Part shown: one piece after another, positions 1 through 64,000 of the stretch | Position numbering within the stretch: the first letter of the stretch is position 1 | Layout of the letters: the number at the start of each line of letters is the position of its first letter | Source of the DNA: Epiperipatus broadwayi | Taxonomy: Eukaryota > Animalia > Onychophora | DNA: 64,000 nt | Direction of reading: 5' to 3' | NCBI GenBank assembly: GCA_028023455.1 | Contig: JAQFVV010000007.1 | Span: forward strand, 434,001-498,000 | Translations under genes and position numbers: made by a program | Notes under the pieces: model-generated | Database searches by the model: none | Seen by the model: only the letters and a program-made list of their open reading frames with translations | What the model was told of the DNA's origin: nothing

Positions 1-999
1 TATTTGCATCAGTGTAGATCCTTCCTCATTACTGATAGTATAATCTACCATTTTAGTGTAACTATTATCTTGCATTTCCTTAAAACCCTTTGGTTCCATA
101 TTAACTAACTGTTTACCATTTCTGTTTATCATCTAATGCTTTTGTGCAGACTAAGTACATAAGTATTTATTTATCAGACTATAAATGAACACATGCCATA
201 GTGTATCACACTGTCCCTAACTGTTTTGCAGTTACCTTTAACTTCTTTTTTTTTTAATTTTTTTTTTTACAATCTACTTTTTAGTCTATGCCCTTTTTAC
301 AGCTTGACAACACTATTTTAGTTTTTTTTTTTCAAATAATAATTTATTTATTACCAGTCTCAGTTTATTGGGCAATTCACTATGTTTTTAAACTTGCATT
401 CAACACTTTGTATATGATTTTCTGTCAAAACACTTATTTAGAAGTGGCTCAAGTTTATAATGTTCATTCTTTTATTATTGGAAGTGCTAGTTGTTGGTAA
501 TAGTATAAGTTCATTAGGGTTTACTTTCATGGAAATATAAAATAGAATATAAGTTTACAAGTAAGACAATTTTTTGTGAACAGTAGTCCAATGGTTGGAC
601 CTCCCTTGATACTAAGGTATAGGTGAGATGTATGTTCACACTTTTAACATGTTTGGCACCATATGTAATAGTCTGGATATATGTGGTGGATTATGCACTA
701 TTGGGGTCTGCATCTGTCTACAGTTGGACCTAGAGTCTGTGGGTAGGTTACTGGAGATGTTGCAATGAAGTATATAACCAATGATTGCACCCATTATTAA
801 ATGACTATCTCTAAACCTATTTATTAAATCTAGACACAATTTATGTTAGTTCATTCATCCATCTCACATCCCTTTCTTTGGTTCTGTTATGTTCCAGTTA
901 TTGAACCCAGGAAAAATTCGCCTTTGACTCTCTTAACAGAAATGAACATATATATATATATATAATATTATAAATCGATATCTGTATTTTTTCAAAATA

Positions 1000-1576
1000 A
1001 TATATGCAAATTTATAAATAAATATTTAAAAATACAGTTTTTAAAAGCTTATAAAAAATATATGTATAACCGTCACTTAGGAGCACTTTCAACTAACTTG
1101 TAGCTTTGTCAATTATGACGTTTAAAATGTCAGCTTTCCCATAATTCTATAACGTCAACTTTCCCATAATTCTGTAATCTTAATGTACAAAACAAAATTT
1201 TAAAAATAATGATAATTTAGCAACTTCTGTCTTTTATGACCATAATAAATCATGTATATATGATTTCGATTTTAATTATAACAACGTAAAAATATTGGAA
1301 ACTGAAAGAAATAATAATAAAAGGAAAATTAAAGATGCAAAGTTGATATGTAAATACAAGCAACATTTGGTTAATAGGCAAGCAGCAAACATTAAGAACA
1401 CAGAATTATGGGAAAGTTGACATCATAGAATTATGGGAAAGCTGACATTTTAAGCGTGATAGTTGACACAAAGCTACAAGTTAGTTGAAAGCGCTCCTAA
1501 GTGACGGTTATACATATATTTTTATAAGCTTTTAAATACTGTATTTTTAAATATTTATTTATAAATTTGCATATAT
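1000..1576. repeat. Foldback insert: ~176-bp inverted arms (1000-1175 / 1400-1576), ~225-bp spacer, 35-bp tail on the left only
   Basis: atatatgcaaatttataaata...cataattctgt is the reverse complement of acagaattatg...tatttataaatttgcatatat with few mismatches; catatatatata occurs at 947-958 and 1570-1581. Confidence 0.9.
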
Positions 1577-1858
1577 ATATAACAACTTCTGCACTTTTTT
1601 ATAGGTTACAACTAGCATAAGTAGTATTCAATTTATTGTAGAACTATTATATGAGAGTAAAATGTGTCTGTGTGTATATTAAGGCTAATAGTTGTCTGTT
1701 GAATTCAAAATTGAATCGATAAATTAGAGACTGGAATAACACAAACAAATAGTTTAACATTTTTTAAACATATAAATTAAATTAAAATATTTTAAATATA
1801 ACAAAAAATGTAATTGGATGTGATATGAACCACTCACAAGATTATTGAAAATAAAAAA

Positions 1859-2170
1859 TGATTGAAAAATATTAATACTTCAAAATAACCATGATGCTGA
1901 CTATCTAAATTCAATATCCATTTTATATTTAGAATACCATAGTTGTTTCTCCTTGGATAAAGACACATCACTTAGTTAGGTACCCCCAAACTAAGGTATA
2001 AATCACTACTGTCATAGATATCTACGGCAATACCTTAGTTTGGGGATACCTAATTAAGTGATGTGTTTTTATCCAAGGAGAAACAACTATGGTACTCTAA
2101 ATATAAAATGGATATTGAATTTAGATAGTCAGCATCATGGTTATTTTGAAGTATTAATATTTTTCTATCA
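1859..2170. repeat. Long palindrome, 141-bp arms (1859-1999 / 2030-2170), 30-bp centre
   Basis: tgattgaaaaatattaatacttc...ctaaggtat pairs with ataccttag...gaagtattaatatttttctatca. Confidence 0.92.
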
Positions 2171-2203
2171 TATATATATATATATATATATATATTATCT
2201 AAT

Positions 2204-2239: not shown

Positions 2240-2405
2240 GGCTGCAGAAAGGAGTTTGCTATTAACTGAAAGGAGACACTTTGATTCCTCTTGGAGGCCT
2301 TAAAAGAACTGAGCAGGGCAAATTCCTAATGTCCACTCCATACGTTCTGGTCATTGCAGCTGTTATTACTATGTGATTATTCATATAGTATACGAACATA
2401 GATGG
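2240..2405 (+). ncRNA. Decayed HDV-like self-cleaving ribozyme in the RTE 5' UTR
   Basis: P1 GGCTGCA 2240-2246 / TGCAGCT 2355-2361 (G-U at +1); P3-L3-P3' ACG-TTCTGGT-CAT 2342-2354; GT linker; P4 hairpin 2364-2392; J4/2 CGAA 2393-2396; P2 pairing imperfect. Confidence 0.65.
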
Positions 2406-2565
2406 GCTGCTCACCAACATGCATTAGCCAGCGTGGTGAGGTTATTGGCTTTTTACCTCTGAGTTTAAGATCAAGAAACACCATGGTCTTTCTTCTCAGT
2501 GCCTGATAAGGCAGAATGAATGTTTGTGTAAATGAAAAATATTTTTCCAATACATATATACAATT

Positions 2566-6990: not shown

Positions 6991-7503
6991 TGCTCAAAAT
7001 AGTGGAATAACATCAGTGTGATTTGCATGAATTTAAGATGGGTTCAAATTGAAATATAAGCTAATCTTGGATGGTACAATTGAGTTGTAAGCTACCTTTA
7101 CAATATTTTTTTTTCAAATGTAGAATAAATTTAATAATGCATAATTAATATTAGTATCTTAAAATTATTAGTTTATAAATATTAAACTTAGATTTCATTA
7201 CTTACAAAGAATGGTTTTATGAATAATAGAGTATTTCTTTCACCAATTTCTTTCACCATACATCACTATTTCACTATTTCTAATATGAAAGGATTATTCC
7301 TATTAAACTTTTACTGGATAATTCAGGAAGATACAATAATTTATGTATCTTAGTTTATTTTTGTATCATCTCCAAATATATTGCCTATCAATATGATGAA
7401 TCTTTAATTTTTTATACAAAATATCAATTTCTTATTTATGCTTATATCATATAAATAATACAAACCTCTGTTAGATAATGAAAATTATTCTTCATGTGTA
7501 AAG

Positions 7504-7570
7504 TATGATAAACAGAGTAGCTAAAATTCAAAAAACATGTTTTTGAATTTTAGCTACTCTGTTTATCATA
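7504..7570. repeat. 67-bp near-perfect palindrome within a direct-repeat-flanked insert (7437-7585)
   Basis: tatgataaacagagtagctaaaattcaaaaaa-catg-tttttgaattttagctactctgtttatcata; tatgcttatatc at 7437-7448 and 7574-7585. Confidence 0.88.
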
Positions 7571-8809
7571 TTCTATGCTTATATCTGAATTTTTTTACTA
7601 AAATAGAAATAAATACATACATTAATCACAAATGTGGCAACATCATGCATTATAATGTGTCTTTGCTCTAGCTTTTGATACTTATTACAGAGTTGTTTTG
7701 GAATTCATCTTCAGAAGAATATTCTTCTGTCTCCTCATGTTTACAAAGAATTCTTTCATTTTACTCTGGCTTGGATTAACATTCACATAGGGATATTGTC
7801 TACCTGTGTTATGATTTCCATTCCTAATATTTATTTTATTTTGAAAAATAACTTATGCCTACCAGCAATAATAAGTATTTGATTAATGTACTCTGACTGA
7901 TTGTGTTAAATTTTCCTCACTCGTTGGTGTTCACACAGAGAATTCAGTTAGGGTCTTTAATTTCATAGCCTGGCTTCTAAAGAATGGTGTGTAGCTTCTT
8001 TTATTAAAATTTTATTTTTCTTGAGTTACTTGATGTCTGATGCCTTGTCAATCTTCTTTCCAAAAGCTCTCTGGAGTAAAAATAACAATTTAGAATGGAA
8101 TCTAATTGTCTCAAAGAACACTGACTCAGACTTTAATTTATACAATTTAATGTACATAATATATCATATTTTTTTCTAATTTACTATAACCTAACCATAG
8201 CTAATTAAGAATAAGTCCTTTCACTGTCTATATTCAGCAAAAATAATATACTAAAGGCAGAACTTGTACCTTTTTTACCATCACCCTCATTTAAGCCTGG
8301 AAGCCCTTAAGGAATTTAAAATAATAGCAAGATTGGGATGATCTATTATGGCATTAGTCTGTGTATTGACATTCAGGACTAGAGATTCTGGGAATAAGAC
8401 ATCTCCCACTGTTTTTTCTGCTCCTTCATTCTTGGGTCACAGTTGCCTTGAAGATGAGAAAGAAGAACATGGGTTACTTCACTCCTTGCTCCCAGTTTAT
8501 TTATTTAGCCCTTTTGTTTGCTGAAGTAATTAAGTTCACTGGGGAAAATTCAGGCTTGTCTCTGTAAATTTAATTAGTATTTTAACTCATACTAATTAAA
8601 TTTCCTCAATTATCTGATATTCATTTTTTCTTCCAAGAATAATTACTGTACACAATACATTTTACTTAATTTTTTATATTACAGTAGCTTGATTAATTTT
8701 ATAGCAGCTATTTAATTATTTATTCATTATATTCATATTCTCTCTGTAAATTAATTTCATAAATTATTAAAATACATAACTTATTATATTAAAATGCATA
8801 TTTTTCAAT

Positions 8810-12400: not shown

Positions 12401-13044
12401 ACTATTTTTGTTTAAGTGTAAGTAACCTATATGATGGGATGGTTGAGGGCAAGAATATTAACGTAATTAGTTTATTAATCCCACATATAGCTCATTAAGT
12501 GTGTTAGGAAGACTATAAAACTTATTATCTCAATATATTTCTTATCAGAAAACATGAGTGCTGTGATTTTTTACTTATTGACCTCTATTCCATTTAGTGT
12601 AAAAAAAATTGAATTTGAGTAAAGTACACTTGCCATTAGGCAGCATTACTCACATTAAACTTGACAATACAAATTTTCCCAAATGATGACATTTTTAATT
12701 CCTTCAATACTAGGTTTAAATATTTAAACTGTTAATTTTCTCTCTAAGCTAGGTTTGAGCTAAACAACTGTTCTAAGTTTTACTATGTCTTAGCTCACTA
12801 ATTCTCAGGATAAAAAGAACAATTTAGTATGGAATCTAATTTTTTGGAGTACACAAAGACTGCAGTGGCTCAGATTTAAATTATACAATTTAATATATAT
12901 ATAAGACATATTTTTCGGGTTCATCCGTGTTAAAAATTTTAAATAGTGATATTCCAACATTTCACTTATTATCCTCTATTCCATTTAGTGTAAATAAAAT
13001 TGAATTTGAGTAAAGTACACTTGCAATTAGACAGCATTACTGCT

Positions 13045-14093
13045 TTGATTAAACATTGACTTTTGAATACATATTTTGTATACAATGGACAGCATTACAG
13101 ACAAGTTTTGGTACTCCTATGGGCTCACCTATCTCAGGAGTAACAGCTGATTTATTCATGGAAAATATAAAAACTCGTGCTTTAGAATCATCATCTTTAA
13201 AACCTCTCATTTGGCTCAGATATATAGATGACACTTTTGTCATATGGCAACATGGAAAAAATAAATTAGATGATTTTTTTTTACATTTATAATGGAGACA
13301 GAGTCTGATGGAAAACTCCCTTTTCTTGATGTTCTAGTCACTAGAATACCAAATAGTTTATCTTTTTCGATTTACAGAAAAAATACACACACGGATAGAT
13401 ATTTACACTTCCATTCTCATCATCACCAGACTCAGATAGTTTCTGTAGCCAAAACTCTTTTAAATAGAGCAATTAACCTTTCAGACAATTAACATCTGAG
13501 AGAAGAAATAAATCATATTAAGTGTTTTATTAGCAAATAGTTATGATTATAAATTTATAAAAAAAGCCTTATTTCAAGCCCAAAATGGTCAAAATAGGAA
13601 ACAAAAATATGATAAATCAGCTATTAGGATTTGTGCTCTATATGTAAAAGGAACTACAGACACTATTGGACGTATATTAAAATGCTATAATATAGATACA
13701 TTATTTTCTACTCATCAAAAGATCAGCAATATAATAACCAAGCCTAAGGATTCTTTCTCACTTGAATCTCATGGTGTTTATCAAATCTCATGTAAAAATT
13801 GTAAAGCTTCTTACATAGGTATGAGTAATCATCGCATAAGTGTTAGGAGAGATGAGCATGCTAATGCAGTTAAACAACACTCATCATCATCAGCACTCTC
13901 ACTTCATACTATAGATTCAGGTCATAAAATTGATTTTTCTAGTACCAGGATCATATCCAGATGTGATAATCTCTACCAGTGCAAAATTAGAGAAGCCTTT
14001 GAGATACTTAAAAGGCCAGATTGTATCAATAAGCGAGATGATACATGTAAACTTCCTCCTATTTGGAAAGATTTTTTTAAAAAACATTTTTAA
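13045..14093 (+). pseudogene. PLE reverse transcriptase + GIY-YIG endonuclease remnant (frameshifted)
   Basis: FGTPMGSPISG, WLRYIDDTFVIW, LPFLDVLV, YRKNTHTDRYLHF-SHH, then GVYQISCKNC-ASYIG, RRDEH, IREAFEI, IN-RDD. Confidence 0.9.
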
Positions 14094-14187
14094 ATTTAAC
14101 ATTTTTGCTATTGGTGGAACTTTAACATTTATTCAAATCAGTGATTGTAGCACCTCTACAACCATCTTTCTATATTTTATCACCCAG

Positions 14188-14215
14188 TGGATGACTTGTG
14201 TGACGAAGTTGAAAC
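14188..14215 (+). ncRNA. Decayed minimal hammerhead motif in the PLE pLTR
   Basis: tggatga-cttgtgtgacgaagtt-gaaac: CUGANGA box with 2 changes, gactt/gaagtt stem II, GAAAC. Confidence 0.5.
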
Positions 14216-16620
14216 TTCAGAATATCACTATTTAAAATTTTTAACACGGATGTACCCGAAAAATATGTCTTTTATATATACAACCCGTGAAAATCTTCAT
14301 TTTCAATATATATATATTGTAATGGGCACATACTTATGTTACATTGTTTTTTTATTAGTAAACATGAAAAGAATAAAAGTTCACAAATAAAACTTCCTTT
14401 TTAAGAATTAAACATTGAAAATTAAAATTCTATACTAAACTTGTATCTATATAAAACTGCACAAATAAAAAAAATTATTAAAATAAAACTTTATTAAAAA
14501 TAGAAAAGGTATTGTAAAAGCAAGAACTTAAAAAAGATTTAGAGATAAAATATATATCTTTAAGTTTGAAAACAAATTAATTAATGTTATCGAAAAATGG
14601 AAATGATTATTTTAATTAGTCAATGTAAACTAGCCTTGGGCATTTAAATGTATAAGCAAAGGTCAGATAGGAGAGAAAAACAATGGAACCGGACCTCAGC
14701 AAAAAGACCATCACATCGATGACATAATGTCTATTGGATCCTTAAGTTAGGTGTAAAAGAAAAATTTGGAAATAAAAAAAGTTATTAAGAGATGACAGAT
14801 ATGTTTTAGTGCGGAGTGAAGGAGAAGGGATTGAAAGACGCACTTTCAATTTCTTCAGTTGTTCAAAAAATGAAACATTGTTTTCCAATATTGTGGACCA
14901 CAGGACATCAAGGCCCAGAAGAATACCATCAACTATAAATGACCAATGGTTAACTGCACACCGATCTCCTTATGACTTCGTGGGAATTAACACCTTCCAT
15001 TACAAAAAAATCAGAGACTACGGACATTTTTCAAAATCGTAAAAACTTTATATTCATTTGAAAACATTAAGAACTTTAAAATATAAACTTTCTCCATATT
15101 TAAAAAAAAAATAGAAATAGATTCCTATCTGACCAAACTAAATTATTTATTAATTAATTATAATTTTATTTGATGTATTTCTTTTTTGTAAAATCATTTC
15201 CATTTATTTTTTTTTTGTTCTTTAAGTTTTATTTATGATTTTTGTTTTGCGATAAATTAAATTATATAAATGTTAAACTTAAGTCAGACATGAATGGCTA
15301 TATAGATTTGTAAAGTTATATTAGGGGAGGGTAATCTTAGGTTATTTGTTTCGTAGTTGAATTGGGTCAATGGATTGGATATATTGGTGTAATTGGTAGA
15401 TGTAGTATGATGTTCGCTATGGGAAGAATCGCTTTATATGCCACACACTTCCTTTTTGGCCTATGGATTGCGATTCGTAAGTTGGCAAAATGACCGCAGT
15501 CCTTTCCTATGGAGTTTTTTTTATTGCTCTTCTTGTCAGATAGATGTAGTATTCCTATCTGACGAGAGGCAATTTCTTCTCTTAACCTTTTTGTGCTGCT
15601 GTATTTTGTATTACATTGAATGCATCAATATATCAGATGAATTGACGTTAGTTTGACTGCGAACTTTTGGCCTAAGGTTAAATAAGGATAAAATATTTTC
15701 TTGCAAATGCAAATCTATGTAGTCTATTCATACTCGACACTCTAAATAAAAATGCATTAAATTTAAGTTGGGTATGGAAGTTGCATGGATTCGTTATCGG
15801 TTAATTATGTTTTTGGTTTTCATATTCGATCAAAATATATAGACATTCGGTAAATAATGATACCTTATGGTGAGTATCTAAAATGTATTTATTTGGATGT
15901 CTTGTAAGTTATTGGTGTCACTGTGGTATCTTATGATGAATACCAGTGGGTTTCTTGTATTCCCTATGCAATTGATGGTATCAATGATTTTATAGTTTGA
16001 TCGTTTATGTTTATTTTGAAATGTTTTTGACTGTGTAATCTATGTAACCGATCTATACTCAACATTTTAAAAACACATTTTATAAATCCGTCTGTGCAAA
16101 CTTATAAAATTTAAAATGTAAATTTATAAAAATTAAAATGTAAATTAAAATCAAAGTTAAAAATGTAAATTAAATTTTAAAATGTAAACTGATACTAAAA
16201 TAATTTTAAATATTATATATGTGTATAAATAAATGTTTGTGTGTATAATTAATGGCAGTGGTTTATTTTATTCTTTTATATATATATATATATATCTTAG
16301 ATAGAAATATTATAAAATAAAAATCTCTGCTATTCCACTGAGCTAGTGACAATGGGCTAAAGACTGGAATCAAAATGTATAAATAAAAGGTAAAAAAAAT
16401 TTTTTTTGACTTACGTATCTGCCTACTTTATAAATTTTCTAGGTTCAAATGCCTAGTGGCGCCCTGTAGTTACAGATTACGTTAAGTGCTAGCTTCTCTG
16501 GATCGTTATAATATATATATCCTTTTTACTATTATTTTCCCTTATATGTTTTTATTGTAATTTGTATATTTGTGTATATGTGTATATTTATGTATATGTG
16601 TATATATATATTTTATAGTT

Positions 16621-16904: not shown

Positions 16905-18155
16905 TATAATTAGATCATAATATTATAGGAAGATTAAAGGTAAAGTAATGATACTTGACATGTTGGTAAAATATTTAAAATGGGATAAAATACAAATTGT
17001 ATATTTTATTGATATATTTTAATATGAAAATGTTAAGAAGTATCTTAATATTTATAGAATCAAATATGGAATATTGTATATCCTAGTTGTAAATAATTTT
17101 AAAGTGAAGTGTAAGTTTTAAAAGTTTTGTTTATATTAATTTATTTTATTTTATTTTTATTAAATCTAAGACGTGTAAATTATTTTCAATTTTGTATTAC
17201 TACTGCAATAAATGTTAATGTTTATTTTTAAAATTAACAATGTTGAGAGTCTCTTTTCTTGTTTTCCAAGTCATTATTCACTGTCCTAACCACACATATA
17301 TTGTAATAATTAAAGATATTTGGTATTATGGCATATAATCTAAAATAAAACAATAAATAAGAAAAATATTATGATTGTTAAAGATATTTGATGTTGTATC
17401 CAAAATTTAAATTAATACATTTTTTTCTTCATCTTACTCAATGATCAAAATGAAGACTGATAACTAATATGCCATATAAGAATAAAAATGATTTGATTAC
17501 GATTAATAGTGATAGGTATTAATTAATAATTTTAATTAAGATTTTTATCAATTTGTAAGAAAATATAGTTAATTATTTTGAAATAGAAATATTGATTAGT
17601 ATATTTGTTTCTTAATTGTTTTAAATGTAGCTAGACGTAAGTAAAATTCCTCTTTACATTGGTTATGCAAATTAAAAAAACAATAATTGCCTGAGATATT
17701 GATTACGTTTAGGAATATTAATAAAGAAATGTAATGCAATTCATATTAATAATTAAATAAATATTATATGATGTTATAATTATATTTTACATAAGAAATT
17801 ATAATATTAAATATAATTTGCTTATTTTAATTGTGAGTCATGGGAATATCCTTGATATCTTATCTGAATAGTGTTTGGTAATATTTCTATACCATTGAGA
17901 GTATTCTTTTCATATATACTTAGTGTTAAAAGGGGTACATTACTGGATGATTAAAAATAAGTCTCATGATTATGGTGATTTTATTATTAGATAATGTATA
18001 ATTTTAATATAATATATTAGACATGAAAAGGGTAATATTTGTATTGTAAGAATTTATATAAAAAAGAAAATTTGTTAGTATGAGCCAAAAGTTAGTTATT
18101 GTTATTTACATCCACTGTATCATAGTAGTTGGAGGTGGTCATTGTTTGGTTAGAG
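16905..18155. repeat. Copy 1 of an old ~1.25-kb direct repeat (partner 19976-21548); possibly a highly decayed minus-strand LINE ORF2
   Basis: Colinear matches such as tagatcataatattataggaagattaaagg and catcttactcaatgatcaaaatgaagactgataacta; weak minus-strand PLIFL*YYDLI resembling PLLFLIYINDL (LINE identity uncertain). Confidence 0.8.
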
Positions 18156-19975: not shown

Positions 19976-21548
19976 TATAATTAGATCATAATATTATAGG
20001 AAGATTAAAGGTTATTATAATATGAATAGCATGGTGAAATATTTAAAATGGGATAAAATACTAATTGTATATTTTATTGATATATTTTAATATGAAAATA
20101 GAGTCAAGTATTGAATATACTATATTGTAGCTCTAAATAATTTTAAAGCAAAAAATAAATTATTTATTTTATTCTAAGTATTTTGTTAATATTAGTTTTT
20201 AACGTTTTGTGTATTATGTTAAATATTTTTTTATTAAATCAAAGATATGTAAATTATTTTAAATTTTGTATTACAATTGTAATTATAAATTTATTTAAAC
20301 GCACGTTGATTACATAAGTAATATTCATTAAGGCTGTAGCCTCAAGCACATGTGTCTAAAATGCGATCATAGGGACCTCTACAGGTCTTAAACCACAAGC
20401 TTACTCTTTTCTTCCAAAGAGTAAGCTTGTGGTTTAAGACCTGTAGAGGTCCCTATGATCGCATTTTATATGCAAAAAAGAGTAAGCTTGTGGTTTAAGA
20501 CCTGTACAAGTCCCTACGATTGCATTTTATACGCATGTGCTTGAGGGTACAGCCTTAATGAATATTATTACAATTGTAATAAATGTTAATGTTTGATTTT
20601 AAAATTAACAAAGTGTTGAGAGTCTCTTTTTTTTTGTTTTCCAATTCATTAGTCATTATCCTAACCACACATATATTGTAATAATTAAAGATATTTGGTA
20701 CTATTGCACATAATTTTAAATAAAACAATAAATAAAAAAAATATTATTATTGTTAAAAATATTTTATGTATCCAAAATATTAATAAATACAATTTTTTCT
20801 TCATCTTACTCAATGATCAAAATGAAGACTGATAACTATTATGCCATATAAAAATAACAATGATTGGATTATGATTAATAGTTACAGATATTAGTTAATA
20901 ATTTTAATTTAGTTTTTAATCAGTTTGTAAGAAAATTTAATGAATTATTTTGGAAGAAAAAACTGATTAGTGCATTTGTTCTTAATTATTTTAAATGTAG
21001 CTAGATGTAAATAAAATTTCTCTTTACATTTAGTTATGTAAATTAAATTTAATCTAAAAAAAACAACTGCCTGGGATGTTGATTAAGTTTAGGAATATTA
21101 ATAAAGAAGTAAAATACAATTCATATTAATAATTAAATGAATAGTATATGGTGTTATAATTAAATTTTACATAAGAAATTTTAATATTAAATATAATTTG
21201 CTTACTTTAATTGTGAGTCATGGGAGTATCATAGATATCTTATCTGAGTAGTGTTGGGTGATATTCCTATGCCATTGTGGATATACTTTTGGTATATACT
21301 TAATGTTAAAAAGGAATACCTTACAGGATGATTAAATAACAACTCTAATGATTATAGTGATTTTATTGTTAGATAATTTATTAATCTTGCTATAATATAT
21401 TAGACATGAAATGAGTAATATTTTATATTGTAAGTATTTTATATAGAAGAAATAAAATTACTTTTGCAGATCTAGAAGTTAATTACTGTTATTTACATAC
21501 ATTATATCATAGTATTTGGAGGATGGTTGATTATCCAATTAGGGTACA
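19976..21548. repeat. Copy 2 of the ~1.25-kb direct repeat, carrying a ~297-bp palindromic insertion
   Basis: Colinear with 16905-18155 apart from the insert. Confidence 0.8.
20270..20580. mobile_element. Palindromic insertion with 14-bp TSD and 35-bp one-sided tail
   Basis: attacaattgtaat at 20270-20283 and 20567-20580; empty site visible in the paralogue near 17195-17220; inverted repeat 20319-20567 with a tandem duplication in the right arm. Confidence 0.88.
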
Positions 21549-37608: not shown

Positions 37609-39562
37609 TATGATTATTGCACATACTGCAATCACACATATACATTTAATATTAAGTAATATTAAAGATTGTAGTTTTTTTAATTATACAAATAAGTAAA
37701 AGAATTAAAACCAATGAAAAAAGGAATGCCTTAATTAATATAATGAGATAAAGAGAGGGAATAAAATAAAACAAGATTCTTATCTTTTACCCTCCAATGT
37801 TCAGATTTTGAGAAAATAAAAGTATTAAAGTTAGAAAATATCAGAATCATATATTTAGTTTAAGATTAAAAATGAAAAAAGGAAATATAAATAAAATGGG
37901 AACTCAAATGACTTAAAAAGTGATAATTGGGGAGTTTTAAATAAAAATATAAATAAAATTTAGAATAGGACAAAAGATAAAGATATGTTCTTAAAATTAC
38001 ACATTTTGACAAAATGAAATCCATATGCAAATGTAGGTATAAAGAGAGAAAGGTTTATTGCATGTTTAAATGAGAATAATTCAATTAAAAAAATAATTGA
38101 GAAATGAATGTAAAACACAATGTTATAAAATATATAATTGTTAATTAGAGAAGATATTAATTAGTATTAAAGTTTATCGGCTTAACGTTTTCGAGGATCC
38201 ATGCCTAGCTTATTTGAATATTTGTATTTGCATATTTTATTAAACATTTTATGAAGGCTATGAATATGAGGCATGGATGCTCAAAAACGTTAAGCTGATA
38301 AACTTTAATACTAATTAATATCTTCTCTAATTAACAATTATATATTTTACATATAGTGAGAAGTAAAGCTATATTTATTACAATGTTATAAAATGATATG
38401 AAATTAAAATAAATTGTGTATAAGTTATAGAAAACATTTTAAAGTTAGAAGTGTGAAAGAAAACCTACTGACAATAGATCAAGATAAGCAAATAATTTGA
38501 AATAAAAATAAAAAATAATTAAAGACAGTTGATGTGAACACTTCAGTGAGAGCACTGCTCTGAGAAGAAGTAGAGATTAGAACCTAGTGGGAAGCAGACA
38601 TTAAAGGGGAAAAAAGGATAGCTGAGTGAAGGACATTTTTGGAGCATACTGACAAACTGAATGAATATGAAACTAATCTATAATGCAAGTGAAGCTTCAA
38701 GGATGTGTGGCTAAGGGCCATTGCAGTCGCTGGTCGATCCAAACCCACCGTGCTCATATGGTCACCTCACCATGAAACAACTGCCAGTGTAGCACCTGTC
38801 TGATGATCTGACTGCCATGCCATTAACACCCTAGTATTGTGAAGTCACTATGTGTAGAAGAGGAGACCCCATAAACAAGTCATGATGTGTCAAAGAGGAG
38901 ACCCCGTAAACAAAAGCCAAAGCCGAAGAACAGCTATCTCTACTAAGGAAGTGGAGGAATTCCACATGATGGTCAGCAGGACAATAGTTAGCATCAAAGA
39001 AGAAGGAAACCTAGGTGATTCAAGGCATTTATAGGATTTAACACATACACCTAATTGTAATATTATATTTAAATGATTTTATTGTATGTAAATATTTCAT
39101 GTAATTTTTTTTCTTGTTATTTTAGTATTATAGTAAATGTTTCATTAATTATTTTATCTGTATCATCTCCTTTCTTCACCATTCCTATAGTTTAATGTAC
39201 CTGGAGGGTTTACTTATAATTATTACTCCATTTGAGTTACTAAGTAACATGTGAGGATTGTTGTACAGTATTACTGATCCCATTAAATTTATAATTTAAC
39301 CAAGAGCTGTAATTCTTTAATAATTACAGCAGTCGAGAGACGTTTGATCGGGAAAAAGAAACTTGTGGTAATATCTGTATTGTCACAGGTTCGATCATGT
39401 ATGGATATAATTTGTTTATGTCTACATGTTCTCTTTGCTTGTGGTAATAGAAGGTGGATGATTTAAATTTAAGAACACTTCTACATAATAGTAAATGGTC
39501 ACGCACACCACACATTTTATTTATTATATTTTATATATTTTATTCCACCTCATCCTGTTACA
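37609..39562 (+). repeat. 3' LTR (contains a 263-bp insert; lacks ~150 bp present in LTR1 near 27955-28110)
   Basis: Colinear with 26806-28615; ends cacctcatcctgttaca. Confidence 0.85.
38117..38394 (+). mobile_element. Short PLE-pLTR-like palindromic insertion with 15-bp TSD and 34-bp tail
   Basis: acaatgttataaaat at 38117-38131 and 38380-38394; empty site in LTR1 near 27317-27335; 77-bp arms 38130-38206 / 38269-38345; hammerhead fold 38256-38296. Confidence 0.85.
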
Positions 39563-48700: not shown

Positions 48701-48957
48701 TATATACACATTTATTTATTCCAGCGACTTTCATTACCATCGGACTAATACAAAGTAAATACCCTTTTTTTTATTTATAGTTATCTAAAATATAGTTTTA
48801 ATAGAGTATAAATCTAACTTTATTTTCGTTTTGTATGAGAGGTTAAACCAACTCTTTTAAACTTATTCACAGCTGGAGATTGCAACACATGATTGGAGAA
48901 AATGTAGATAAATGCTAATATATAAATATATGTATATTGTCCATACTAAACTTAATG

Positions 48958-49140
48958 TAATTACAAGGAACTTGAACACGAACTTTCAAGTTCCCTACAT
49001 CCATCCAATCAATCTTATACAACTGATACACAGGACCACATACATGTGCAAAAGATAAATGGTCATGTGTATCAGTTGTATAAAATAGATTGGATAGATG
49101 TAGGAAGCTTGAAAGGTCGAGTTCAAGTCCTTTATAATTA
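48958..49140. repeat. Older inverted repeat (~80-bp arms, ~85% identical, 22-bp loop) with a 30-bp left tail
   Basis: taattacaaggaacttgaac...ggacca versus tggtca...gttcaagtcctttataatta; tatataaat at 48919-48927 and 49139-49147. Confidence 0.8.
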
Positions 49141-49459
49141 TATAAATCATAAGTAGTTATATTTATTGATTTAATGTTTATAAACACTCACAAAAATTTA
49201 TTTTAATTTTGTATAATCTAATTTTTCTAATTAATGTTTATTGCATTATAATTATTTATTTAAATATTATAATTTAGTAAGATATTGTATATAAGCATGT
49301 GTGTGTTTAGGAGGTGAGGAAATTGCAAAGTTAGTTGTAATAGCAATTATAGAAAAAGAAATTCTCTAAGCTATTAGTAATTGACATGCATAGAGATGCA
49401 TAGAAATCTTGAAATCACATTTTATTCTTTAAAATAATGCAATAAATGTCAGACTTATT

Positions 49460-55517: not shown

Positions 55518-56435
55518 TTTCATTAATGCTCTGTGGGTTTTAGTGCAATGATAAACTGATAAACTCAAAAACCAAAGTTTTTGAATAAAATATTAATCTG
55601 TCACTTCTAATGCTTGAATGTCACATGTCTTTCTGAACACTAATCCTTTGATCACTTTTTAGAGCTTAACTTAAAGAGATGCAGACTTTAAGCAATACAA
55701 TTTTTTTTTTAATTTTGCTTTTCTAAATTAATAATAGTATATTATTCTAGTCTAAAATGAAATTACTTTGTGCTTAGCACCAAAATTGAATTCATTTTAT
55801 CCTGAGAAAAGTATATTTTATGTTGAACAAATTATTTTTGTTAAATCAGATAGTTTGACTTGGTAATATTTAATTTCACAAATTTCTATTTAAAATTAAA
55901 TAATTTTAGTATTTTAGCAAATTGTTGATGTAGCAACATCAAACATTCTTTCCTTAAAACAAACTTTACTTTTAAAATGTCATTCTTCCATACTTTTCTG
56001 GTAATAAACTCATAAATAATAGTATTAACTCTATAAAGTATCCATTTTTAAAAGTCTTCACAATAAATATTTAACAAAAGATTTTTAATACACTCTGATA
56101 AAGATAGCAATGTAACAATGTTCTTTGTTAATTAAATTTTATATCAATTTACATCCTATTTATATCTAATTTTAATGATTTTTTTTATCTAAGACAAAAA
56201 TAATAATAGTATTGCAATTAAAAAACTTATTTTTAATTCTTGATAAGAATATCAACATTAATATTTACTTAACTTTATACTTCTATAAAGATTTTAATTA
56301 TGATGATGCTAATATTTAGCTGATAACATTAAAAAACTTAAAATTATTATTACTATAATAAAAATAATAATATTTGTAAATATCAAAGACATTGACAATT
56401 TCTATTTTTTAATCACCAAAAATGTTAATAACTTT

Positions 56436-56992
<557 letters not shown>

Positions 56993-57651
56993 ATAATAAT
57001 GTAACTGATAATATTAAAAATGAGGAGTTTTTATTAAATGAATTGAGATTCGGAATTTAGAATTTGAATTAAAAAGTAATAATGATAGAAAAATGGAGAA
57101 TACTTATAAGTATAATGAATGAGGTATTATTAGAAATGTACAAGATAAATATAGGGATTTATTATTTTTAAAAGGTAATAAACATCAAGTGTAATTATTT
57201 TAAATAAGAATGAATGATGTTTTTTTAGAAGATCAAAATAAACTTGGTAAGTTTAAAGATTATAATGTTTATAGGTTTTAAATATTCAGAAATAATAATA
57301 AATATAAAATATTATTTTTTAAAAGAAGAATGAGTAAGGAAATAATAAATATTATATGATTTAAAATTAAAAGAAATTTAGTTACTAATCTGTAATGTCA
57401 CCTGCCATTATTAATTAAGTTAAACAATCAAGAATGTGCAGTGTAGAACATTCTGTCTAATATAGAAGAGTTTTAGTTAGAAAACTGTCTTACACCATAC
57501 TTTATAGCTATGCATTTTATTTTGTGTTAAAGTTGTTAATAAATCTATTTTTTGTTACCAAATCTGTTGGAGAATTATATTAAGTTGACACTTACACGTC
57601 AAATTGGTGCAGTTGAACAGGATCTCTAAAAACAGTTTTTGGAATGAAAAA

Positions 57652-58311
57652 ATGGCTGCCATGATACAACTAAGAATAGGAGAATTCGATATTGAAAATC
57701 CCAGTAATTGGCCATTATATGTAAAACTGGTTGAAAAACACTTTTTGATAAACAGTGTTAAGCAAAATGACATTAAAATTGCCGCACTTCTAGGTTTTGC
57801 AGGAATCAAGGTTTTAGAAGTTGCTAACCAGTTATGTGAACTTGTTGAACCAGAAACTGTACAATACGATGATGTGGTTGAAAGATTAACTTTAGAGTTC
57901 TGCCCGCTACCATCGAAGCACATCACTAGACTACACTTTTGTTTACGATATCAAACAAAAAATGAAACCTTCAAGGAATATGATTTAGCCCTGCATGAAT
58001 TAGCTAAAAATTGTGTTTATGGTCAATATTTAGAAGAGGCACTCCTTGAACAGTTGCTACTCAGATTATACAACATTAAATTTTGTGGACAATTACTTGC
58101 GGACTCGAATATTACATATATAGAAGCCATTAAAAAGGGAATAGCCCATAAACTAGTAATAGAACAGGCAAAAGATTTTATGAATAATGTGTCACCTCAT
58201 ATATTTTATCATCCAATTCAGAAAAATGCTGAACAAGATGAGGATTGTAACTATAACCGTGTATGTTTCCACTGCAAAAAAAATGGACATGTTGAACACA
58301 ATTGTAAATAA
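57652..58311 (+). pseudogene. Gypsy gag with CCHC zinc knuckle
   Basis: MAAM...GEFD...NWPLY...LHELAKNC...CFHCKKNGHVEHNC, ending in a premature stop. Confidence 0.88.
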
Positions 58312-58421
58312 CTGTGTGAAACACGAGGAACCCTAGCGAGAGATTCTGGAAAAAAAACAACTAAAAAGATTGATACGAGATCAAAACACTGAAAAATTCA
58401 GAATCAGAATTTAAACAAACT

Positions 58422-61100
58422 GTGTGCATCGAAGGAAAACATTGTAAAATGGAAATTAATAGCAACTCCAGGGTTTCTTTCATGTCTCTAAAGGATTGGA
58501 AATCTATTTTTAAAAATAAGACTAAAAAAAAAATAGTGCATACTGAAGTTTGCGCAACAGATGTTAATGGAAATAAAGTCGAAATTATTGGAAAGGTTAT
58601 GGTCAAAGTCAGTTTGAACTCAAACAAAGGAGTTTTACCATTATATATATTACATAAAAATATAAAACCCTTAATGGGCAGAAACTGGTTCCATTCTTTG
58701 GGGATTAGGATTAATATGATAAAGAAAATAGATATCGGAAATGAAATGCAGATTAAATTCCCATCACTTTTCACTAAAAATTTAGGACAAATGAAAACAA
58801 AGCCAAAACAACTAGAGTTAAAAGAAAACGCAGTACCAGTAATTTGCAAGACTAGAAAAATACCATTTGCACAACACATTAAAGTTGAGGAAAACCTAAA
58901 TGACCTATTACAAGAAGGCATAATAAGCCCAATTGAAAACTCAGACTGGGCTACACCAATTGTGGTGGTAAACAAACCAGATGGTAAAATACGTATTTGC
59001 AGAGACTATTGAAAACTCAGACTGAGCTACACTAATTGTGGTGGTAAACAAACCAGATGGTAAAATACGTATTTGCAGAGACTATCATGGAACAATAAAC
59101 AAAAATATCTGCAAGAGTGTATACCCAGTTCCAAATACAAGAGAGGTCCTGGCCTGTTTAGAGAAGGCTTCACATTTTGCAAAACTCAACCTCCAGTCTG
59201 CATTTCATCAAATACCAGTAAGTGAAGAAACTGTGAGAATGTTAACAATAACCACTCACTTAGGATTATACAAATACAATCGACTTCCTTTTGGAATAAC
59301 TGTTGCTCCAAACTTTTTTCAAGTAAAGATGGATATCTTAGTTAAGGGTTTAGCAGGAATCATTCCATATTTTGACAACATCCTCATCACTGCAAACTCA
59401 GAAGAAGTCTTCAAGAATAAAGTCACTCAAATGTGTCAAAGATTGAAAGAATTTGGAGCAACTCTTAATATTAACAAATGTGTATGGAATACACAGAAAC
59501 TAAAATTTCTAGGCCACATTATATCCGAACAAGGAAAAATCCCAGCACCAGAGAAAACAAAAGCAGTATATAATGCTCCCAAACCTACAAACACCAAAGA
59601 ATTACAAGCATTTTTAGGGCTTATTAATTATTTTGACTCCTTTCTAAAGGGAAAAGCACATGTGGTCCAACCATTATTTGACCTTTTGAAGAAGAATCAA
59701 GTCTGGAAGTGAACATCAGAGCATGAAGATGCCTTTAAGAAGGTTAAATCTTTTTTGATGTCTGAGAAACTTTTAGTACACTATGATTATAAAGCAGATT
59801 TATGCCTGACAACAGATGCATTAGGTGTGGTGCTAAGTCACCCAATCCCAAGTGGTGAGAGATCTATAGCCTATGCTTCAAGGACCCTATCTAATGCTGA
59901 GAGAAACTACAGTCAGATAGATAAGGAGGCACTGGCAATGTTTTATGGAATTAAAAAGTTCCACCAGTATGTATATGGGCAAAAATTTGCCATAACTACA
60001 GACCACAAAACTTTGTTGGGAATATTCACTAAAGTAACCTCTATTCCAGATCACCTGAGTCCCCAAATGATATGCTGGATATCAATACTCTCAGGTTATG
60101 ACTATGATTTAAATTACAGAAGTGGGAAGTTGATCCAATATGCTGATGCACTGTCTAGACTGATGCTTCAGAATGAATCAGACCTACCATAGAAGTAAAC
60201 TATATCGACCAGTAGAAGAATAAAACAATGAACAGTAGAAGTGTATCAGACTGGACCAACAATGAAACAGCTTACCAAATTCTGAAGAACTGGATCAGGG
60301 AAGGCTGGCCTAACAAGAAACCAGATAATCTACCAATGTTTTTCTGGAATGTATGTATGCAATTGTCAATCTGCAAGGGATGTGTTCTAAATGATGATAG
60401 AGTAGTAATACCTTCACAAGGACAAAAACAGGTTCTAGAACTACTTCATAGTAGCCGTCCAGGAATAGTGCACACCAAAGCATTAGCCAAAAGTTATGTT
60501 TGGTGGCCAAGGTTAAATGAAGATTTAGAAACTTACACAAAAGAGTGTACTGATTGCCAAACAAACAGCAGACTGAACATAAAGGAATATAGCCAGTGGC
60601 CACCAGCTACAGGGGCCTGGAAATGTATACATATTGATCATTCTGGTCCTTTTATGAGACATATTTTTCTAGTTTTAGTCGATGCCTACTCACACTGGAT
60701 TGAGTATAGAATTGTTAAAAATACTGGGATGGATGAAACAATCAAGCAATTGACATCCATTTTTGCAACACAAGGATATCCAGAGATCTTAGTTTCAGAT
60801 AATGGTTCTGGTTTTTCTTCATCTAAATTTAAAAACTTCCTGATACACAGAGGTATCAGACATCTTCATACACCACCATACGACCCAGAAAGCAATGGCC
60901 TGGCTGAGAATGCAGTAAATCAACTTAAAGTTGCATTGAGAAAGCAAAAATCCATGAGGATGCTAGATGCTTAAAATCAGATTCTTTTACAACAACATTC
61001 TATTCCAACCGCTGCTAGCGGAAAGACTCCTGCCAAACTTTTTCTGAAAAGAAAGCTACAGACCAACTTAACTTTACTTTTACCCGAACCAACAAGAGAA
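58422..61100 (+). pseudogene. Gypsy pol (protease, RT, RNase H, integrase), broken by stops and frameshifts
   Basis: MEINSNS (catalytic D lost), WATPIVVVNKPDGKIRICRDY, KLNLQSAFHQI, YFDNILI, TTDALGVVLSH, ERNYSQIDKEALA, H..PGIV...WWP, HIDHSGPF, VSDNGSGF, PPYDPESNGLAENAV. Confidence 0.92.
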
Positions 61101-61109
61101 AATAATCAT

Positions 61110-63419
61110 AAAGTTTAAGTTTATAAAGAATAGAGATAATTAGTAGATTGTTAATAATAATGAAATAGATTATATATTTAGAAAAAAAATTTTCCTTGAA
61201 TGTATATATGTATAAAGTTAGGAATATACATGTATAATTTATATTTATTTTCTATTTATGTTGTACATTTTATATTAATTGTTTTATTTGGGCTTGATTA
61301 TTTATTTCAGTTTTTTTAATATATATATATTTTATGTTGTTTTTAGTCGTTTATTGTTTTAATTTTTTATGGGGTTATTATATAGTTATGTTTTTTATTT
61401 TATTTTGTACATTATATCATAGCTCTGAAGAAGACTGCAGGTCAGTCGAAATGTAGGTGTATGTATATGTACAAATAAAGAGTTTTGCTAAAAAGTGTTT
61501 GAAGCTGTTTGGATAAATTGTATTTAAAGAATGAATATAATAAAATAATGTTATTTTTATTAAATGAGGAGTGTTTTGAAAAAAATTAATAAAAATGAGA
61601 GCATGTCAATGGATAAAAGGATTAATAAAATAATAATAATGAATAAAAAAGGTTATATGGAAAAATCAGATATGTTTAAAATGTGCAAAAATTTATGGAT
61701 TACCTAATATTCATAAACAAGGAATTCCAATGGAACCAATTATTAGTAGTTGTAATATTTATTATGAAAATATTTTGAAATGGATTTGTAGTAATATTTT
61801 TTTAAAATATATAACATTATTTGAAAAAAATTGTGCCAATAATTCTACACAGTTTATTAGTCAATTAAGGAATTTTTTAGATAATAAAGCTTTTAAAAAA
61901 TTATTTTTTTTGTAAAATTAGATATAGTTAATATGTATACCAACATTGATCCAGAGGTTGCTATTAATAATATTATAGATTTATATATAAAAGACAAAGA
62001 GGTCAAATTAAAAATAGGTTTTCATTCATATGAGATATTAATGATTTGTTGTAGAGATCTTATTTTTAAATATAAGAATGATTTTTATAAACAAAAAGAG
62101 GATTTAAATATGGGTAATAGTCTAAGTGGTTTTTTTTGGCAGGAGTATATATGTATAATTTTGAATGACAATATTTTGTTGATAGTAAAAATAAACCAAT
62201 TTTTTATGTTATGTATGTCGATGATTATTTTATGGTTTTTAACAGTAATAAAAGAAAGGCAGATAATTTTTTGAAATACATTATTAATAAAGAGGAGAAA
62301 ATTAAATTTACTATGGAGAAGAAAATATTAATGTTATTAAATATATGGATGTTAAGATTATTAAAAAAAATGGTAATAATAATAGTTATTGTAGAAGCTT
62401 CTGTATATAAAAAAACATTCTTTATATTATTAAATAATTGTTTATCAGATATTGCTAAACATAGTAAAATAAATATTATTAATAATAAAATTCTTAGAGC
62501 AATTAAATTATGTTCAAATAATGATTTGTTTAAAAGTGAGATTAATATAATAAAGCATGAGTGATTTGTAAATGATTATTCTAGAGTTATTATTAAACAT
62601 TTATTTTCTAATAAAAATATTGATAAAATAAAGAAAAGAATAAGATTAAATAAGAATAAAAAAGAAAATTTATATTGGTTTCAATATATCCAAAGATTTT
62701 TTTTTTGTTAAAATTAGAAAATTATTTAAAATGATTAATAAGAAATATAATGTTTTTATTTATCCAGCTTATAAAAAAATAAAAAAAAAGTTTATTTTTT
62801 TTATTAATAATAATAGAGAATGTAATAATTTAGAGGTTATGAATTCAGTTCACATAATAAAATGTTTGAATTGTTTTAAAAAAAATATAGAGATATCATA
62901 TGTTGTGACTATAAAAAATAAATTGGAAACTAGATTAAAACAGTATTTAAGTGATAAAAATTTTGTTATTTACAATAATATGAATAAATTTAAACATAGA
63001 GATTTTGAAATAAAACCTTTAGAATGTATAAAGTAATACCATAAAAGAATGATGAAGGAAGGAATTTACATTAGTGAAGTTAAACCTGAATTAAATAGGA
63101 TGTTAATAGAAAAGAAAAAAGAAAATAATAGGCCTGTTAATTAAATATTTTAAGGTATTTTTTAATGGGTATGTAAATGTAAAAAATTTGATTAAGTTGA
63201 GATTGTTTGTAATAAAAAAAGGTGTTGAGGTAAAGAAAAATTTTAGTGTGTTTTAATACTTTTTGCATTTGTTTGAAAAATGTGATATTTGTTATTATAT
63301 ATTTGTATCTGTGTTTTTTATTACTTTTTAGTATTTCTTGAAAAAGACTATATAAAATAGTCAAAATGTTGGATATATTTAGTTTTAAAAAAATGTTTGA
63401 TGTATTCATTGACATATAT
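61110..63419 (+). mobile_element. Old, very AT-rich Penelope-like element (pLTR-ORF-pLTR)
   Basis: EPIISSCN, MYTNID, FKYKNDFYKQ...MGNSLSG, MYVDDYF, IKFTMEK, IKCLNC...ETRLKQY; hammerhead-like motifs at 61425-61455 and 63337-63370. Confidence 0.8.
61425..61455 (+). ncRNA. Best-preserved minimal hammerhead core in the window
   Basis: CTGAAGA-A-GACTG-caggt-CAGTC-GAAA-tgta: intact boxes and a perfect 5-bp stem II. Confidence 0.65.
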
Positions 63420-64000
63420 GGTAATTTATGAACTATTTTGAAAAGAAAAAATGGGTTGATGATATTTTGAATTCATTAACAACTTTAATATTAATAACCA
63501 AATTGCTTCTACACATGTCACTAATAATTTAAAATGTAATTTTCAAACCTGATATAAAATACTTTTGTTTATTTAATTTACACAAGAGAGAGATTCAATT
63601 ACACTCAGATGCTACAAATTTATATTTTTTCACTTATTTTGCAATAAAATCTCTAAAAAAATATTTCTTTATCAAATCACCATATATCAATTCTCAATAT
63701 TCCACAGATGAATTTATTGACTTTTTTAATTTTATTTTCTTCGCTTTCTGTGAAGAAATTTCTGATTCCTAAAGTTCAATAGTAATAAACCTTAGTCTAT
63801 CTCCAAATATGTGAACCAATTATATTTTCCTATTTGGTTATACATCAAATAATCAAATAAATCCTTCAAAGAAATTGCCACCATATTATGGTTTAAAAGT
63901 GTAATCTTTTATAGTAGGAACCATAATTTTAAAATTAATTTTTTTGAATTCAGACTCAAGCTGAAACTTATCAAAATTATTAATAATTTTTAAAGAGAGA

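What the first reader, a model, noticed from the sequence alone, without database searches (positions are those of the whole stretch)
947..63491. Recurring architecture of non-homologous palindromic insertions (direct repeat + inverted repeat + one-sided ~33-35 bp tail): candidate PLE-made MITE mimics
Seen: the layout recurs at least seven times, with DR and tail lengths of 12/35 (947-1581), 12/55 (7437-7585), 12/33 (12892-14316, an RT-bearing PLE), 14/35 (20270-20580), 15/34 (38117-38394), 9/30 (48919-49147) and ~13/58 (56427-63491, a degenerate PLE). One IR arm abuts or overlaps one DR; the other is separated from its DR by the unique tail. Two inserts have visible empty paralogous sites, so they are true insertions. 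Arms share no obvious homology between inserts, and true MITEs have symmetric ends. Established: PLEs often carry inverted pLTR segments, a short 3' tail (about 34-37 bp for D. virilis Penelope, from memory) and minimal hammerheads. Inference: the short inserts are ultra-truncated fold-back PLE products, or other RNAs handled by PLE RT, forming a hairpin class that TIR finders would mislabel as MITEs. They could yield hairpin RNA or cruciforms.
Basis: partly seen in the sequence, partly recalled or inferred. Interest (0 to 1): 0.82.

Follow-up and report, generated by a model that had tools for sequence, protein, structure and literature searches.

The report
Head-to-head Penelope-type retroposon insertions
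The recurring "hairpin plus one-sided tail" inserts are real insertions, but their layout is the published footprint of Penelope-like retrotransposons, made here both by coding Penelope copies and by short, very abundant non-coding repeats, so it is a known kind of mobile element.

Summary
The layout (long direct repeat, inverted repeat, unique tail on one side only) is real at five sites. It is weak at one site (48.9 kb, 9-bp AT-rich repeat) and has ambiguous ends at one (56-63 kb). Two inserts have empty paralogous sites in the window, and their tails belong to the insert. Two of the seven carry Penelope-like (PLE) coding remnants: 12.9-14.3 kb (RT plus GIY-YIG endonuclease) and 61.6-63.1 kb. 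The second lies next to an LTR-less Gypsy gag-pol block.

The short inserts are not one-off hairpins. Arm and tail of the 20.3-kb insert reach 100-1000 times the flank depth in public contigs. Ordinary copies of that family run straight on where this copy turns back. Words of the 38.1-kb insert occur in tiny runs of two species labels. No hammerhead was found.

The architecture matches the published PLE footprint: an inverted 5'-truncated copy, a 30-40 bp tail at one end, and a variable target duplication. Best reading: head-to-head double insertions made by PLE enzymes, partly on non-coding families in trans. This is a new member of a known kind, of modest interest. The scan found the same footprint before on other DNA of this genome.

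The parts
947..1581 (-). P1: 611-bp insert. TSD CATATATATATA (947-958 / 1570-1581, low complexity). Arms 1000-1186 and 1389-1576 (about 93%). Tail 959-999 on the left. The untailed right arm overlaps the TSD by 7 nt.
7437..7585 (-). P2: 125-bp insert. TSD TATGCTTATATC (exact, 12). Arms 7499-7534 / 7540-7575. Tail 7449-7498 (50 nt) on the left. The untailed arm overlaps the TSD by 2 nt.
12892..14316 (+). P3: 5'-truncated coding PLE. RT motifs (YIDD) at 13056-13492. GIY-YIG endonuclease with CxxC at 13560-14090. 3' arm 14210-14280 plus tail 14281-14304. Inverted 71-nt copy at 12894-12964. AT-rich 12-bp TSD.
20269..20580 (-). P4: 282-bp insert. 15-bp TSD TATTACAATTGTAAT. Tail 20284-20318. Inverted copy A 20319-20410. 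Sense partial copy B 20404/20416-20474. Sense copy C 20476-20567 (untailed, overlaps the TSD by 2 nt). The A/B junction lies at a 6-nt microhomology (CTCTTT). Member of a very high-copy family.
38117..38394 (+). P5: 248-bp insert. 15-bp TSD ACAATGTTATAAAAT. Arms 38126-38206 / 38269-38349 (96%). Tail 38350-38379 on the right. The untailed arm overlaps the TSD by 6 nt. Empty paralogous site near 27320. Its words are held by small runs of two species labels.
48919..49147 (-). P6: weak candidate. Arms 48952-49038 / 49060-49146 (85%). Only a 9-bp AT-rich direct repeat. Tail 24-32 nt on the left.
56390..63502 (+). P8: old composite. Inverted arm 56438-56986. Gypsy-type gag-pol block 57604-60974 without LTRs. 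Degenerate PLE RT-EN 61567-63099. 3' arm 63027-63419, then 25-57 nt of tail. Direct repeat ambiguous.
17160..17200 (.). Empty paralogous site for P4: target sequence present once, no tail.
   Evidence: joints
27305..27340 (.). Empty paralogous site for P5: target sequence present once, no tail.

Best explanation
Each site is one retrotransposition event of the Penelope-like (PLE) type. Two copies of the 3' end of one RNA family are laid down head-to-head between a staggered 12-15 bp target cut.

Both outer ends of the insert are therefore element 3' ends. One copy starts at the very 3' end of the RNA and so includes the 'tail'. The other starts about 24-50 nt further in and has no tail, and it is joined to the target through 2-7 nt of microhomology. 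The centre is where the two 5'-truncated cDNAs meet. In P4 this happens at a 6-nt microhomology inside a small hairpin of the element itself.

At two sites (P3, P8) the RNA was a coding PLE. At the short sites the RNA was a non-coding repeat, which for P4, and probably P5, belongs to an abundant family. It was presumably copied in trans by PLE RT/GIY-YIG enzymes.

Shown: the insertions, TSDs and empty sites; that the tail belongs to the insert; PLE coding remnants in P3 and P8; high copy number of P4; microhomology at the untailed end.

Inferred: that PLE enzymes made the short inserts, and that two templates or two start sites were used.
For: - Geometry and TSDs. Significance.
- Empty sites: and joints skipping 303-305 nt.
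- P3 is a PLE. It has GVYxIxCxxCxxxYIG...R..EH in the reading frame. Pfam GIY-YIG scores E=0.0046, below the family cut-off, and RVT_1 scores 2e-5. Atlas neighbours carry GIY-YIG + HTH_animal + RVT_1. A phmmer search gave 5448 hits, and the long ones carry RVT_1 upstream of the match.
- P8 holds PLE RT-EN at 61567-63099 (E down to 3e-21), with its 3' end in the right arm.
- P4: summed word depth is 1e5-4e5 across tail and arms against 350-2000 in the flanks. The variable loose ends among the best-supported ones shown lie at the tail end (20277/20280), and none was listed at the untailed position. Ordinary copies continue 5' at 20404 and continue 3' at 20474.
- P5: a share of 0.33 of its words is held in runs of only 75-98 million letters, including another species label.
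- Published footprint: an inverted 5'-truncated copy, a 30-40 bp tail often at one end only, and both target strands cleaved and extended, with the tail lying between two RT start sites. A 31-bp tail, TSDs of 8-10 bp, palindromes at the inverted junction and trans capture of unrelated sequences are described.
- Microhomology at the untailed end is 2, 2 and 6 nt in the three non-low-complexity cases. My own Fisher combination gives P of about 5e-4.
Against: - No PLE partner with a matching 3' end was found for any short family. Only the window could be compared.
- No hammerhead is present, whereas canonical C-terminal-EN PLEs usually carry one in the pLTR.
- Tail lengths of P2 (50-52) and P8 (up to 57) fall outside 30-40 nt.
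- TSDs of 12-15 bp are also typical of LINE-type target-primed reverse transcription, and an AP-endonuclease LINE is present in the window.
- Copy number was measured for P4 only, and indirectly for P5. P1, P2 and P6 are untested.
- In P4, copy C differs from B at 5 of 59 positions while A and B are identical over 53 nt. A single-template event does not explain this.
Confidence: 0.68

Rival explanations
1. These are LINE-driven SINE insertions. AP-endonuclease LINE enzymes copied short SINE RNAs, and twin priming or template switching produced the inverted duplicate.
For: TSDs of 12-15 bp and terminal microhomology fit LINE target-primed reverse transcription. A LINE ORF with Exo_endo_phos_2 + RVT_1 lies at 2938-5523. 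P4 is a short high-copy family.
Against: Classical twin priming (Ostertag and Kazazian 2001, from my own knowledge) inverts an upstream part of the same RNA, so it does not duplicate the 3' end. There are no A-rich or microsatellite 3' tails. The same asymmetric layout occurs on two coding PLEs in the window. All of the long-TSD palindromes are one-sided.
Confidence: 0.12
2. The palindromes formed after insertion. Simple retroposon copies were later turned into palindromes by fold-back repair or replication template switching at DNA level.
For: The P4 inner palindrome (53 nt, 100% identical, 6-nt loop) sits at an intrinsic mini-hairpin. Copy C is more diverged.
Against: A single intact TSD brackets the whole composite, and paralogs lack all of it. 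The recurrence of a flush untailed end joined by microhomology at the opposite TSD copy is not expected from local fold-back.
Confidence: 0.08
3. These are DNA transposons (MITE or foldback type) with asymmetric ends.
For: Terminal inverted repeats and a flanking duplication are present. A true foldback with an 8-bp TSD exists in the window.
Against: TSD length varies from 12 to 15 and is longer than the TSDs I know of for DNA transposon superfamilies (my own knowledge). One end carries 24-50 nt of unique sequence that is part of the multi-copy family. Ordinary P4-family copies are not inverted repeats (loose ends at 20404 and 20474).
Confidence: 0.05
4. The pattern is a chance coincidence of palindromes and AT-rich direct repeats.
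For: P1, P3 and P6 have low-complexity or short repeats. A 9-mer occurs by chance in 23% of trials.
Against: Exact 12-15-mers at P2, P4 and P5 occur by chance in 1.5-4% of trials each. Two have empty sites.
Confidence: 0.02

Closest known systems
[quoted passage not shown] 2013, PMC3846280; Craig et al. 2021, PMC8557442; Frangieh et al. 2024, PMC11167929)
   Same: Head-to-head inverted copies, a tail at one end only, a variable TSD, a palindrome or microhomology at the inverted junction, a preference for microsatellite-like targets (P1, P3), and PLE RT/GIY-YIG present in two of the seven.
   Different: Five inserts are non-coding and 125-611 bp long. No hammerhead and no direct pLTR were seen. 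TSDs are longer (12-15) than the 8-10 bp reported for A. vaga. Two tails exceed 40 nt.
Non-LTR (animal) retrozymes and non-autonomous PLE derivatives (10.64898/2026.07.22.740005; non-autonomous Chlamys elements in PMC8557442)
   Same: Short non-coding families thought to borrow PLE enzymes. Earlier follow-ups in this genome report hammerhead repeats with the same footprint.
   Different: There is no hammerhead core and no tandem monomer array here. Similarity to a PLE 3' end is not shown.
L1 twin priming (Ostertag and Kazazian 2001, from my own knowledge)
   Same: Both target strands prime cDNA, the cDNAs join at microhomology, and one TSD brackets an inverted structure.
   Different: Twin priming copies each part of the RNA once, giving an inversion. 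Here the same 3' segment is present twice, giving a palindrome, and there is no poly(A).
MITEs and foldback elements (for example the 28770-34213 foldback in this window)
   Same: Hairpin-forming inverted repeats with flanking duplications. TIR finders would call both.
   Different: True foldbacks have symmetric flush ends and a short TSD (8 bp in the one here). These inserts have one unique tail and TSDs of 12-15 bp.

Membership tests
Penelope-like element (autonomous) | PLE-type RT followed by a GIY-YIG endonuclease with a CxxC insertion | tested here: met
   P3: frame translation, Pfam (the GIY-YIG match at 17.7 bits is below Pfam's 22.6 cut-off), atlas, phmmer plus Pfam of hits. P8: tblastn at 61567-63099. 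Absent from P1, P2, P4, P5 and P6.
PLE insertion footprint | An adjacent inverted 5'-truncated copy forming terminal inverted repeats within one TSD | tested here: met
   empty sites
PLE insertion footprint | A 30-40 bp tail at one end only | tested here: met
   P1 34-41, P4 35-37, P5 30-36, P3 24-34, P6 24-32. P2 at 50-52 and P8 at up to 57 fall outside the range. The tail is part of the multi-copy family in P4.
PLE (canonical C-terminal EN clades) | Hammerhead ribozyme motif in the terminal repeat | tested here: not met
   Rfam at gathering score and at E<=10 on the whole window, and on P5 alone. Core-motif scans allowing one mismatch.
Non-autonomous PLE derivative | 3' end shared with an autonomous PLE of the same genome | tested here: inconclusive
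   No similarity to the P3 or P8 3' ends. The rest of the genome could not be searched, and the metagenome scans were blank.
Non-autonomous PLE derivative | A multi-copy family with defined ends | tested here: met
   P4: depth 100-1000 times the flanks, with loose ends at the tail end. P5: indirect. P1, P2 and P6 not tested.
Animal (non-LTR) retrozyme | Tandem monomers, each with a type I hammerhead | tested here: not met
MITE / foldback DNA transposon | Symmetric TIRs flush with a TSD of fixed short length | tested here: not met
   One-sided tails and TSDs of 12-15. Contrast with the 8-bp flush TSD of the 28770-34213 foldback.
L1-type twin priming | The inverted part derives from RNA upstream of the direct part, and there is a poly(A) end | tested here: not met
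   The arms duplicate the same segment, and there is no A-tail.

The most novel reading that the evidence does not exclude
This genome holds several unrelated, hammerhead-less, short non-coding families. At least one has thousands of contigs and a summed word depth 100-1000 times that of its flanks. These families would be mobilised in trans by Penelope-like enzymes. When they insert head-to-head, exactly one copy carries the tail in every one of the 5-6 cases seen, with no symmetric case. That would mean the two target strands use different RT start sites by rule rather than by chance. A Gypsy gag-pol RNA may have been captured in the same way in P8.
Probability: 0.3. Interest if true: 0.55.

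Novelty: new member of a known kind. Interest (0 to 1): 0.34.

Why it matters
Annotation: TIR-based tools will label these inserts as MITEs, and palindromes break short-read assemblies. Recognising the long TSD plus the one-sided tail assigns them to the right class.

Mechanism: natural head-to-head inserts with empty sites give base-level junctions for a retrotransposition pathway so far studied in vitro in one element (PMC11167929). These junctions include microhomology at the untailed end, a join at an intrinsic hairpin, and always one tail.

Biology: perfect or near-perfect hairpins of 36-190 nt inside other repeats are potential sources of hairpin RNA and of DNA fragility. Neither was tested here.

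Tried and rejected
1. Hammerhead ribozymes. Rfam at gathering score and at E<=10 on the whole window and on P5 alone, plus my own CUGANGA...GAAA scans allowing one mismatch, found nothing.

2. A conserved stem between tail and arm bracketing the junction. It looked promising by eye in P2, P4 and P5. The number of arm-tail pairs is no higher than with shuffled tails (P=0.34), and fold z-scores are unremarkable except for P4 and P6.

3. tRNA heads. ARAGORN found none in the window.

4. Shared sequence between inserts or tails. There is none beyond AT-rich noise.

5. My first reading that 56-63 kb is only a Gypsy element. It was corrected by tblastn with long PLE proteins.

6. Fetching other family copies. 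Two metagenome pattern scans were blank. The search for homologous proteins was blank because of its length filter. The search of earlier findings by sequence was blank.

7. Direct repeats for the 1858-2171 palindrome, also across the neighbouring LINE. None was found.
Full report
**Context.** The window is AT-rich (about 27% GC) animal DNA, and the species is coded in the run tables. It is full of mobile elements:
- an AP-endonuclease LINE at 2938-5523;
- Gypsy-type pol at 59-61 kb;
- a giant foldback at 28770-34213;
- segmental or LTR-like duplications.

**Observation.** I re-derived every claimed element with the repeat finder and my own scripts. Five sites show an exact direct repeat of 12-15 nt and an inverted repeat. 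One arm is flush with the repeat, in fact overlapping it by 2-10 nt. The other arm is separated from its repeat copy by unique sequence.
- P1, 947-1581: tail 34-41 nt.
- P2, 7437-7585: tail 50-52 nt.
- P3, 12892-14316: tail 24-34 nt.
- P4, 20269-20580: tail 35-37 nt.
- P5, 38117-38394: tail 30-36 nt.
- P6, 48919-49147: only a 9-bp AT-rich repeat.
- P8, 56.4-63.5 kb: arms about 85% identical, with two competing degenerate direct repeats.

Random placements with the same geometry give a repeat of 12 nt or more in 4% of trials, 15 nt or more in 1.5%, and 9 nt or more in 23%. An unbiased scan for palindromes with arms of 28 nt or more finds eight outside the giant foldback. Five have the long repeat plus a one-sided tail, one is P6, and two have no convincing repeat (1858-2171 and 51753-53034). 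None is symmetric with a long repeat.

The paralog of the P4 flank near 17.18 kb and the paralog of the P5 flank near 27.32 kb carry the target once, with neither arms nor tail. The tail therefore belongs to the insert and is not flank. The inserts share no sequence with each other.

**What the coding ones are.** P3 reads through RT motifs (…GSPISG…, YIDD, LPFLDVLV) and a GIY-YIG endonuclease with the CxxC insertion typical of Penelope-like elements (GVYQISCKNCKASYIG…RRDEH).
- Pfam gives weak RVT_1 and GIY-YIG matches.
- The protein atlas places the endonuclease ORF among clusters carrying GIY-YIG, HTH_animal and RVT_1.
- A full HMMER search gives 5448 relatives. The long ones have RVT_1 upstream of the matched C-terminus.

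The 3' end of the ORF-bearing strand is the tailed end. The 71-nt left arm is an inverted copy of the last 71 nt before the tail.

I first took P8 for a plain Gypsy element (RT, RNase H, integrase). tblastn with the long PLE proteins then showed a degenerate PLE RT-to-EN at 61567-63099 on the same strand (E down to 3e-21). Its end lies in the right arm. The addition is that an LTR-less Gypsy gag-pol block (57604-60974; no direct repeats) sits between the inverted arm and the PLE body. That block is either a nested fragment or a template-switch chimera. This is inference only.

**What the short ones are.** My single read-laying run went to P4 (contigs of three DNA runs of one sample and one RNA run, likeness 80%).
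- Summed word depth jumps from 350-2000 in the flanks to 1e5-4e5 across the tail and arms, and thousands of contigs were laid.
- Variable loose ends lie at 20277/20280, the outer end of the tail.
- At 20404, many contigs continue upstream with a shared motif where P4 turns into its inverted arm.
- At 20467/20474, many contigs continue with family sequence where copy B of P4 stops.
- Several contigs skip 303-305 nt exactly over the insert. These are empty paralogs of the flank, which is itself repeated.

Hence P4 is a head-to-head double insertion of a very abundant short repeat. The ordinary copies of that repeat are linear and include the tail.

For P5, a third of its sampled 31-mers are held by runs of only 75-98 million letters, including one under another species label. 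A single-copy locus would not show this, so P5 also belongs to an abundant family shared between species. This evidence is indirect. P1, P2 and P6 could not be tested.

**Fine structure.** The untailed arm overlaps the target repeat by 2, 2 and 6 nt in the three non-low-complexity cases. My own estimate of the combined chance is about 5e-4, which points to microhomology-guided joining or priming.

In P4 the inverted copy A and the sense copy B meet at CTCTTT. That is one half of a small hairpin (CTCTTT-TCTTCC-AAAGAG) which belongs to the family sequence. The literature likewise describes palindromes at inverted PLE junctions.

A and B are identical over 53 nt, whereas copy C differs from B at 5 of 59 positions. 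This suggests two different template molecules in one event, or later conversion within the tight hairpin. I cannot tell which.

Four of the six tails begin with C after TA. This is post hoc and may be partly definitional.

**Comparison with what is known.**
- Craig et al. [quoted passage not shown]
- Arkhipova et al. 2013 report a 31-bp tail on one inverted pLTR, TSDs of 8-10 bp, palindromes at junctions, and capture of unrelated sequences in trans.
- Frangieh et al. 2024 show in vitro that a PLE protein cleaves and extends both target strands, and starts reverse transcription at two sites whose spacing is the tail.
- Non-coding PLE dependants are also described, namely retrozymes and non-autonomous Chlamys elements.

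The layout here is therefore the known footprint. What differs is the absence of any hammerhead, longer TSDs, two over-long tails, and the fact that the short families have no demonstrated PLE partner.

**Earlier notes of this scan.** Notes on other pieces of the same genome report the same footprint on hammerhead- and tRNA-bearing repeats. Two follow-ups called it the ordinary PLE footprint. I agree. One note on this window claims a hammerhead fold in P5, and I could not reproduce it.

**Mechanism, with its status.**
- Shown: single-event insertions with staggered target duplication; both outer ends are element 3' ends; one carries the tail; microhomology at the untailed end.
- Inferred, about 0.68: PLE RT/GIY-YIG enzymes prime cDNA on both target strands, from the distal start site on one and the proximal start site on the other. 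The two 5'-truncated cDNAs join at microhomology or by self-priming. The short families are copied in trans.

That every head-to-head insert here has exactly one tail would be unlikely if each strand chose its start site freely. For six cases the chance would be about 0.016, on an assumed 50:50 choice. This hints at an intrinsic asymmetry.

Rivals, scored in the form, are LINE-driven SINE insertion with twin priming, later fold-back at DNA level, asymmetric DNA transposons, and chance for P6.

**Verdict.** The phenomenon is a known one, and the short inserts are members of abundant families rather than a new hairpin class. Novelty: new member of a known kind. Interest: modest.

Noticed in passing
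window 28770-34213: Giant foldback: arms of more than 1.8 kb at 97%, built of 527/54-bp tandem units, with an 8-bp TSD AACTTTTC flush on both sides. It is a true symmetric DNA-transposon-like element and a useful contrast to the one-sided inserts.
   Followed up: partly
window 56987-61566: Gypsy-type gag-pol block (RT, RNase H, integrase) with no LTRs. It lies between the inverted arm and the body of a degenerate PLE on the same strand, and may be a template-switch chimera or a nested fragment. It also holds a 76-bp tandem duplication at 58932-59083.
   Followed up: partly
window 26808-28606 and 37611-39553: Two 1.8-kb direct copies at about 91-92% identity bracket the foldback and a 200-aa ORF. 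They look like the LTRs of a large old element. P5 sits in the second copy only.
   Followed up: no
window 51753-53034: Palindrome with 59-nt GC-richer arms (90%). It encloses an interstitial telomere-like array (12-mer AGTTTTAGGGTT, about 12 copies, 52134-52277). A gapped direct repeat (TTTCAGTA..AAGAATTTG) lies 27-35 nt outside both arms, so it does not have the one-sided layout.
   Followed up: partly
window 1858-2171: 314-bp near-perfect hairpin (142-nt arms at 96%, 30-nt loop) abutting an (AT)n tract. No direct repeat was found, even across the neighbouring LINE.
   Followed up: partly
window 12569-12650: An 82-nt fragment, 93% identical to the first 80 nt of the P3 PLE body (12960-13041). 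It lies 240 bp outside the P3 target repeat in direct orientation. It could be a second fragment of the same family or part of a more complex insertion.
   Followed up: no
window 2240-6900 and 24340-25625: LINE with AP-endonuclease and RT (861-aa ORF), flanked by (AT)n tracts at 2171-2238 and 6910-6987. A 1.3-kb copy at 90% identity lies at 24.3 kb.
   Followed up: no
window 20416-20567: Within P4, copies A and B are identical over 53 nt, but copy C differs from B at 5 of 59 positions although one TSD brackets all three.
   Followed up: partly
arm/tail junctions of P2, P3, P4, P5: Four of six tails start with C directly after TA (TTA|CA, TTA|CT). This may mark the inner start site, but the test is post hoc.
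   Followed up: no
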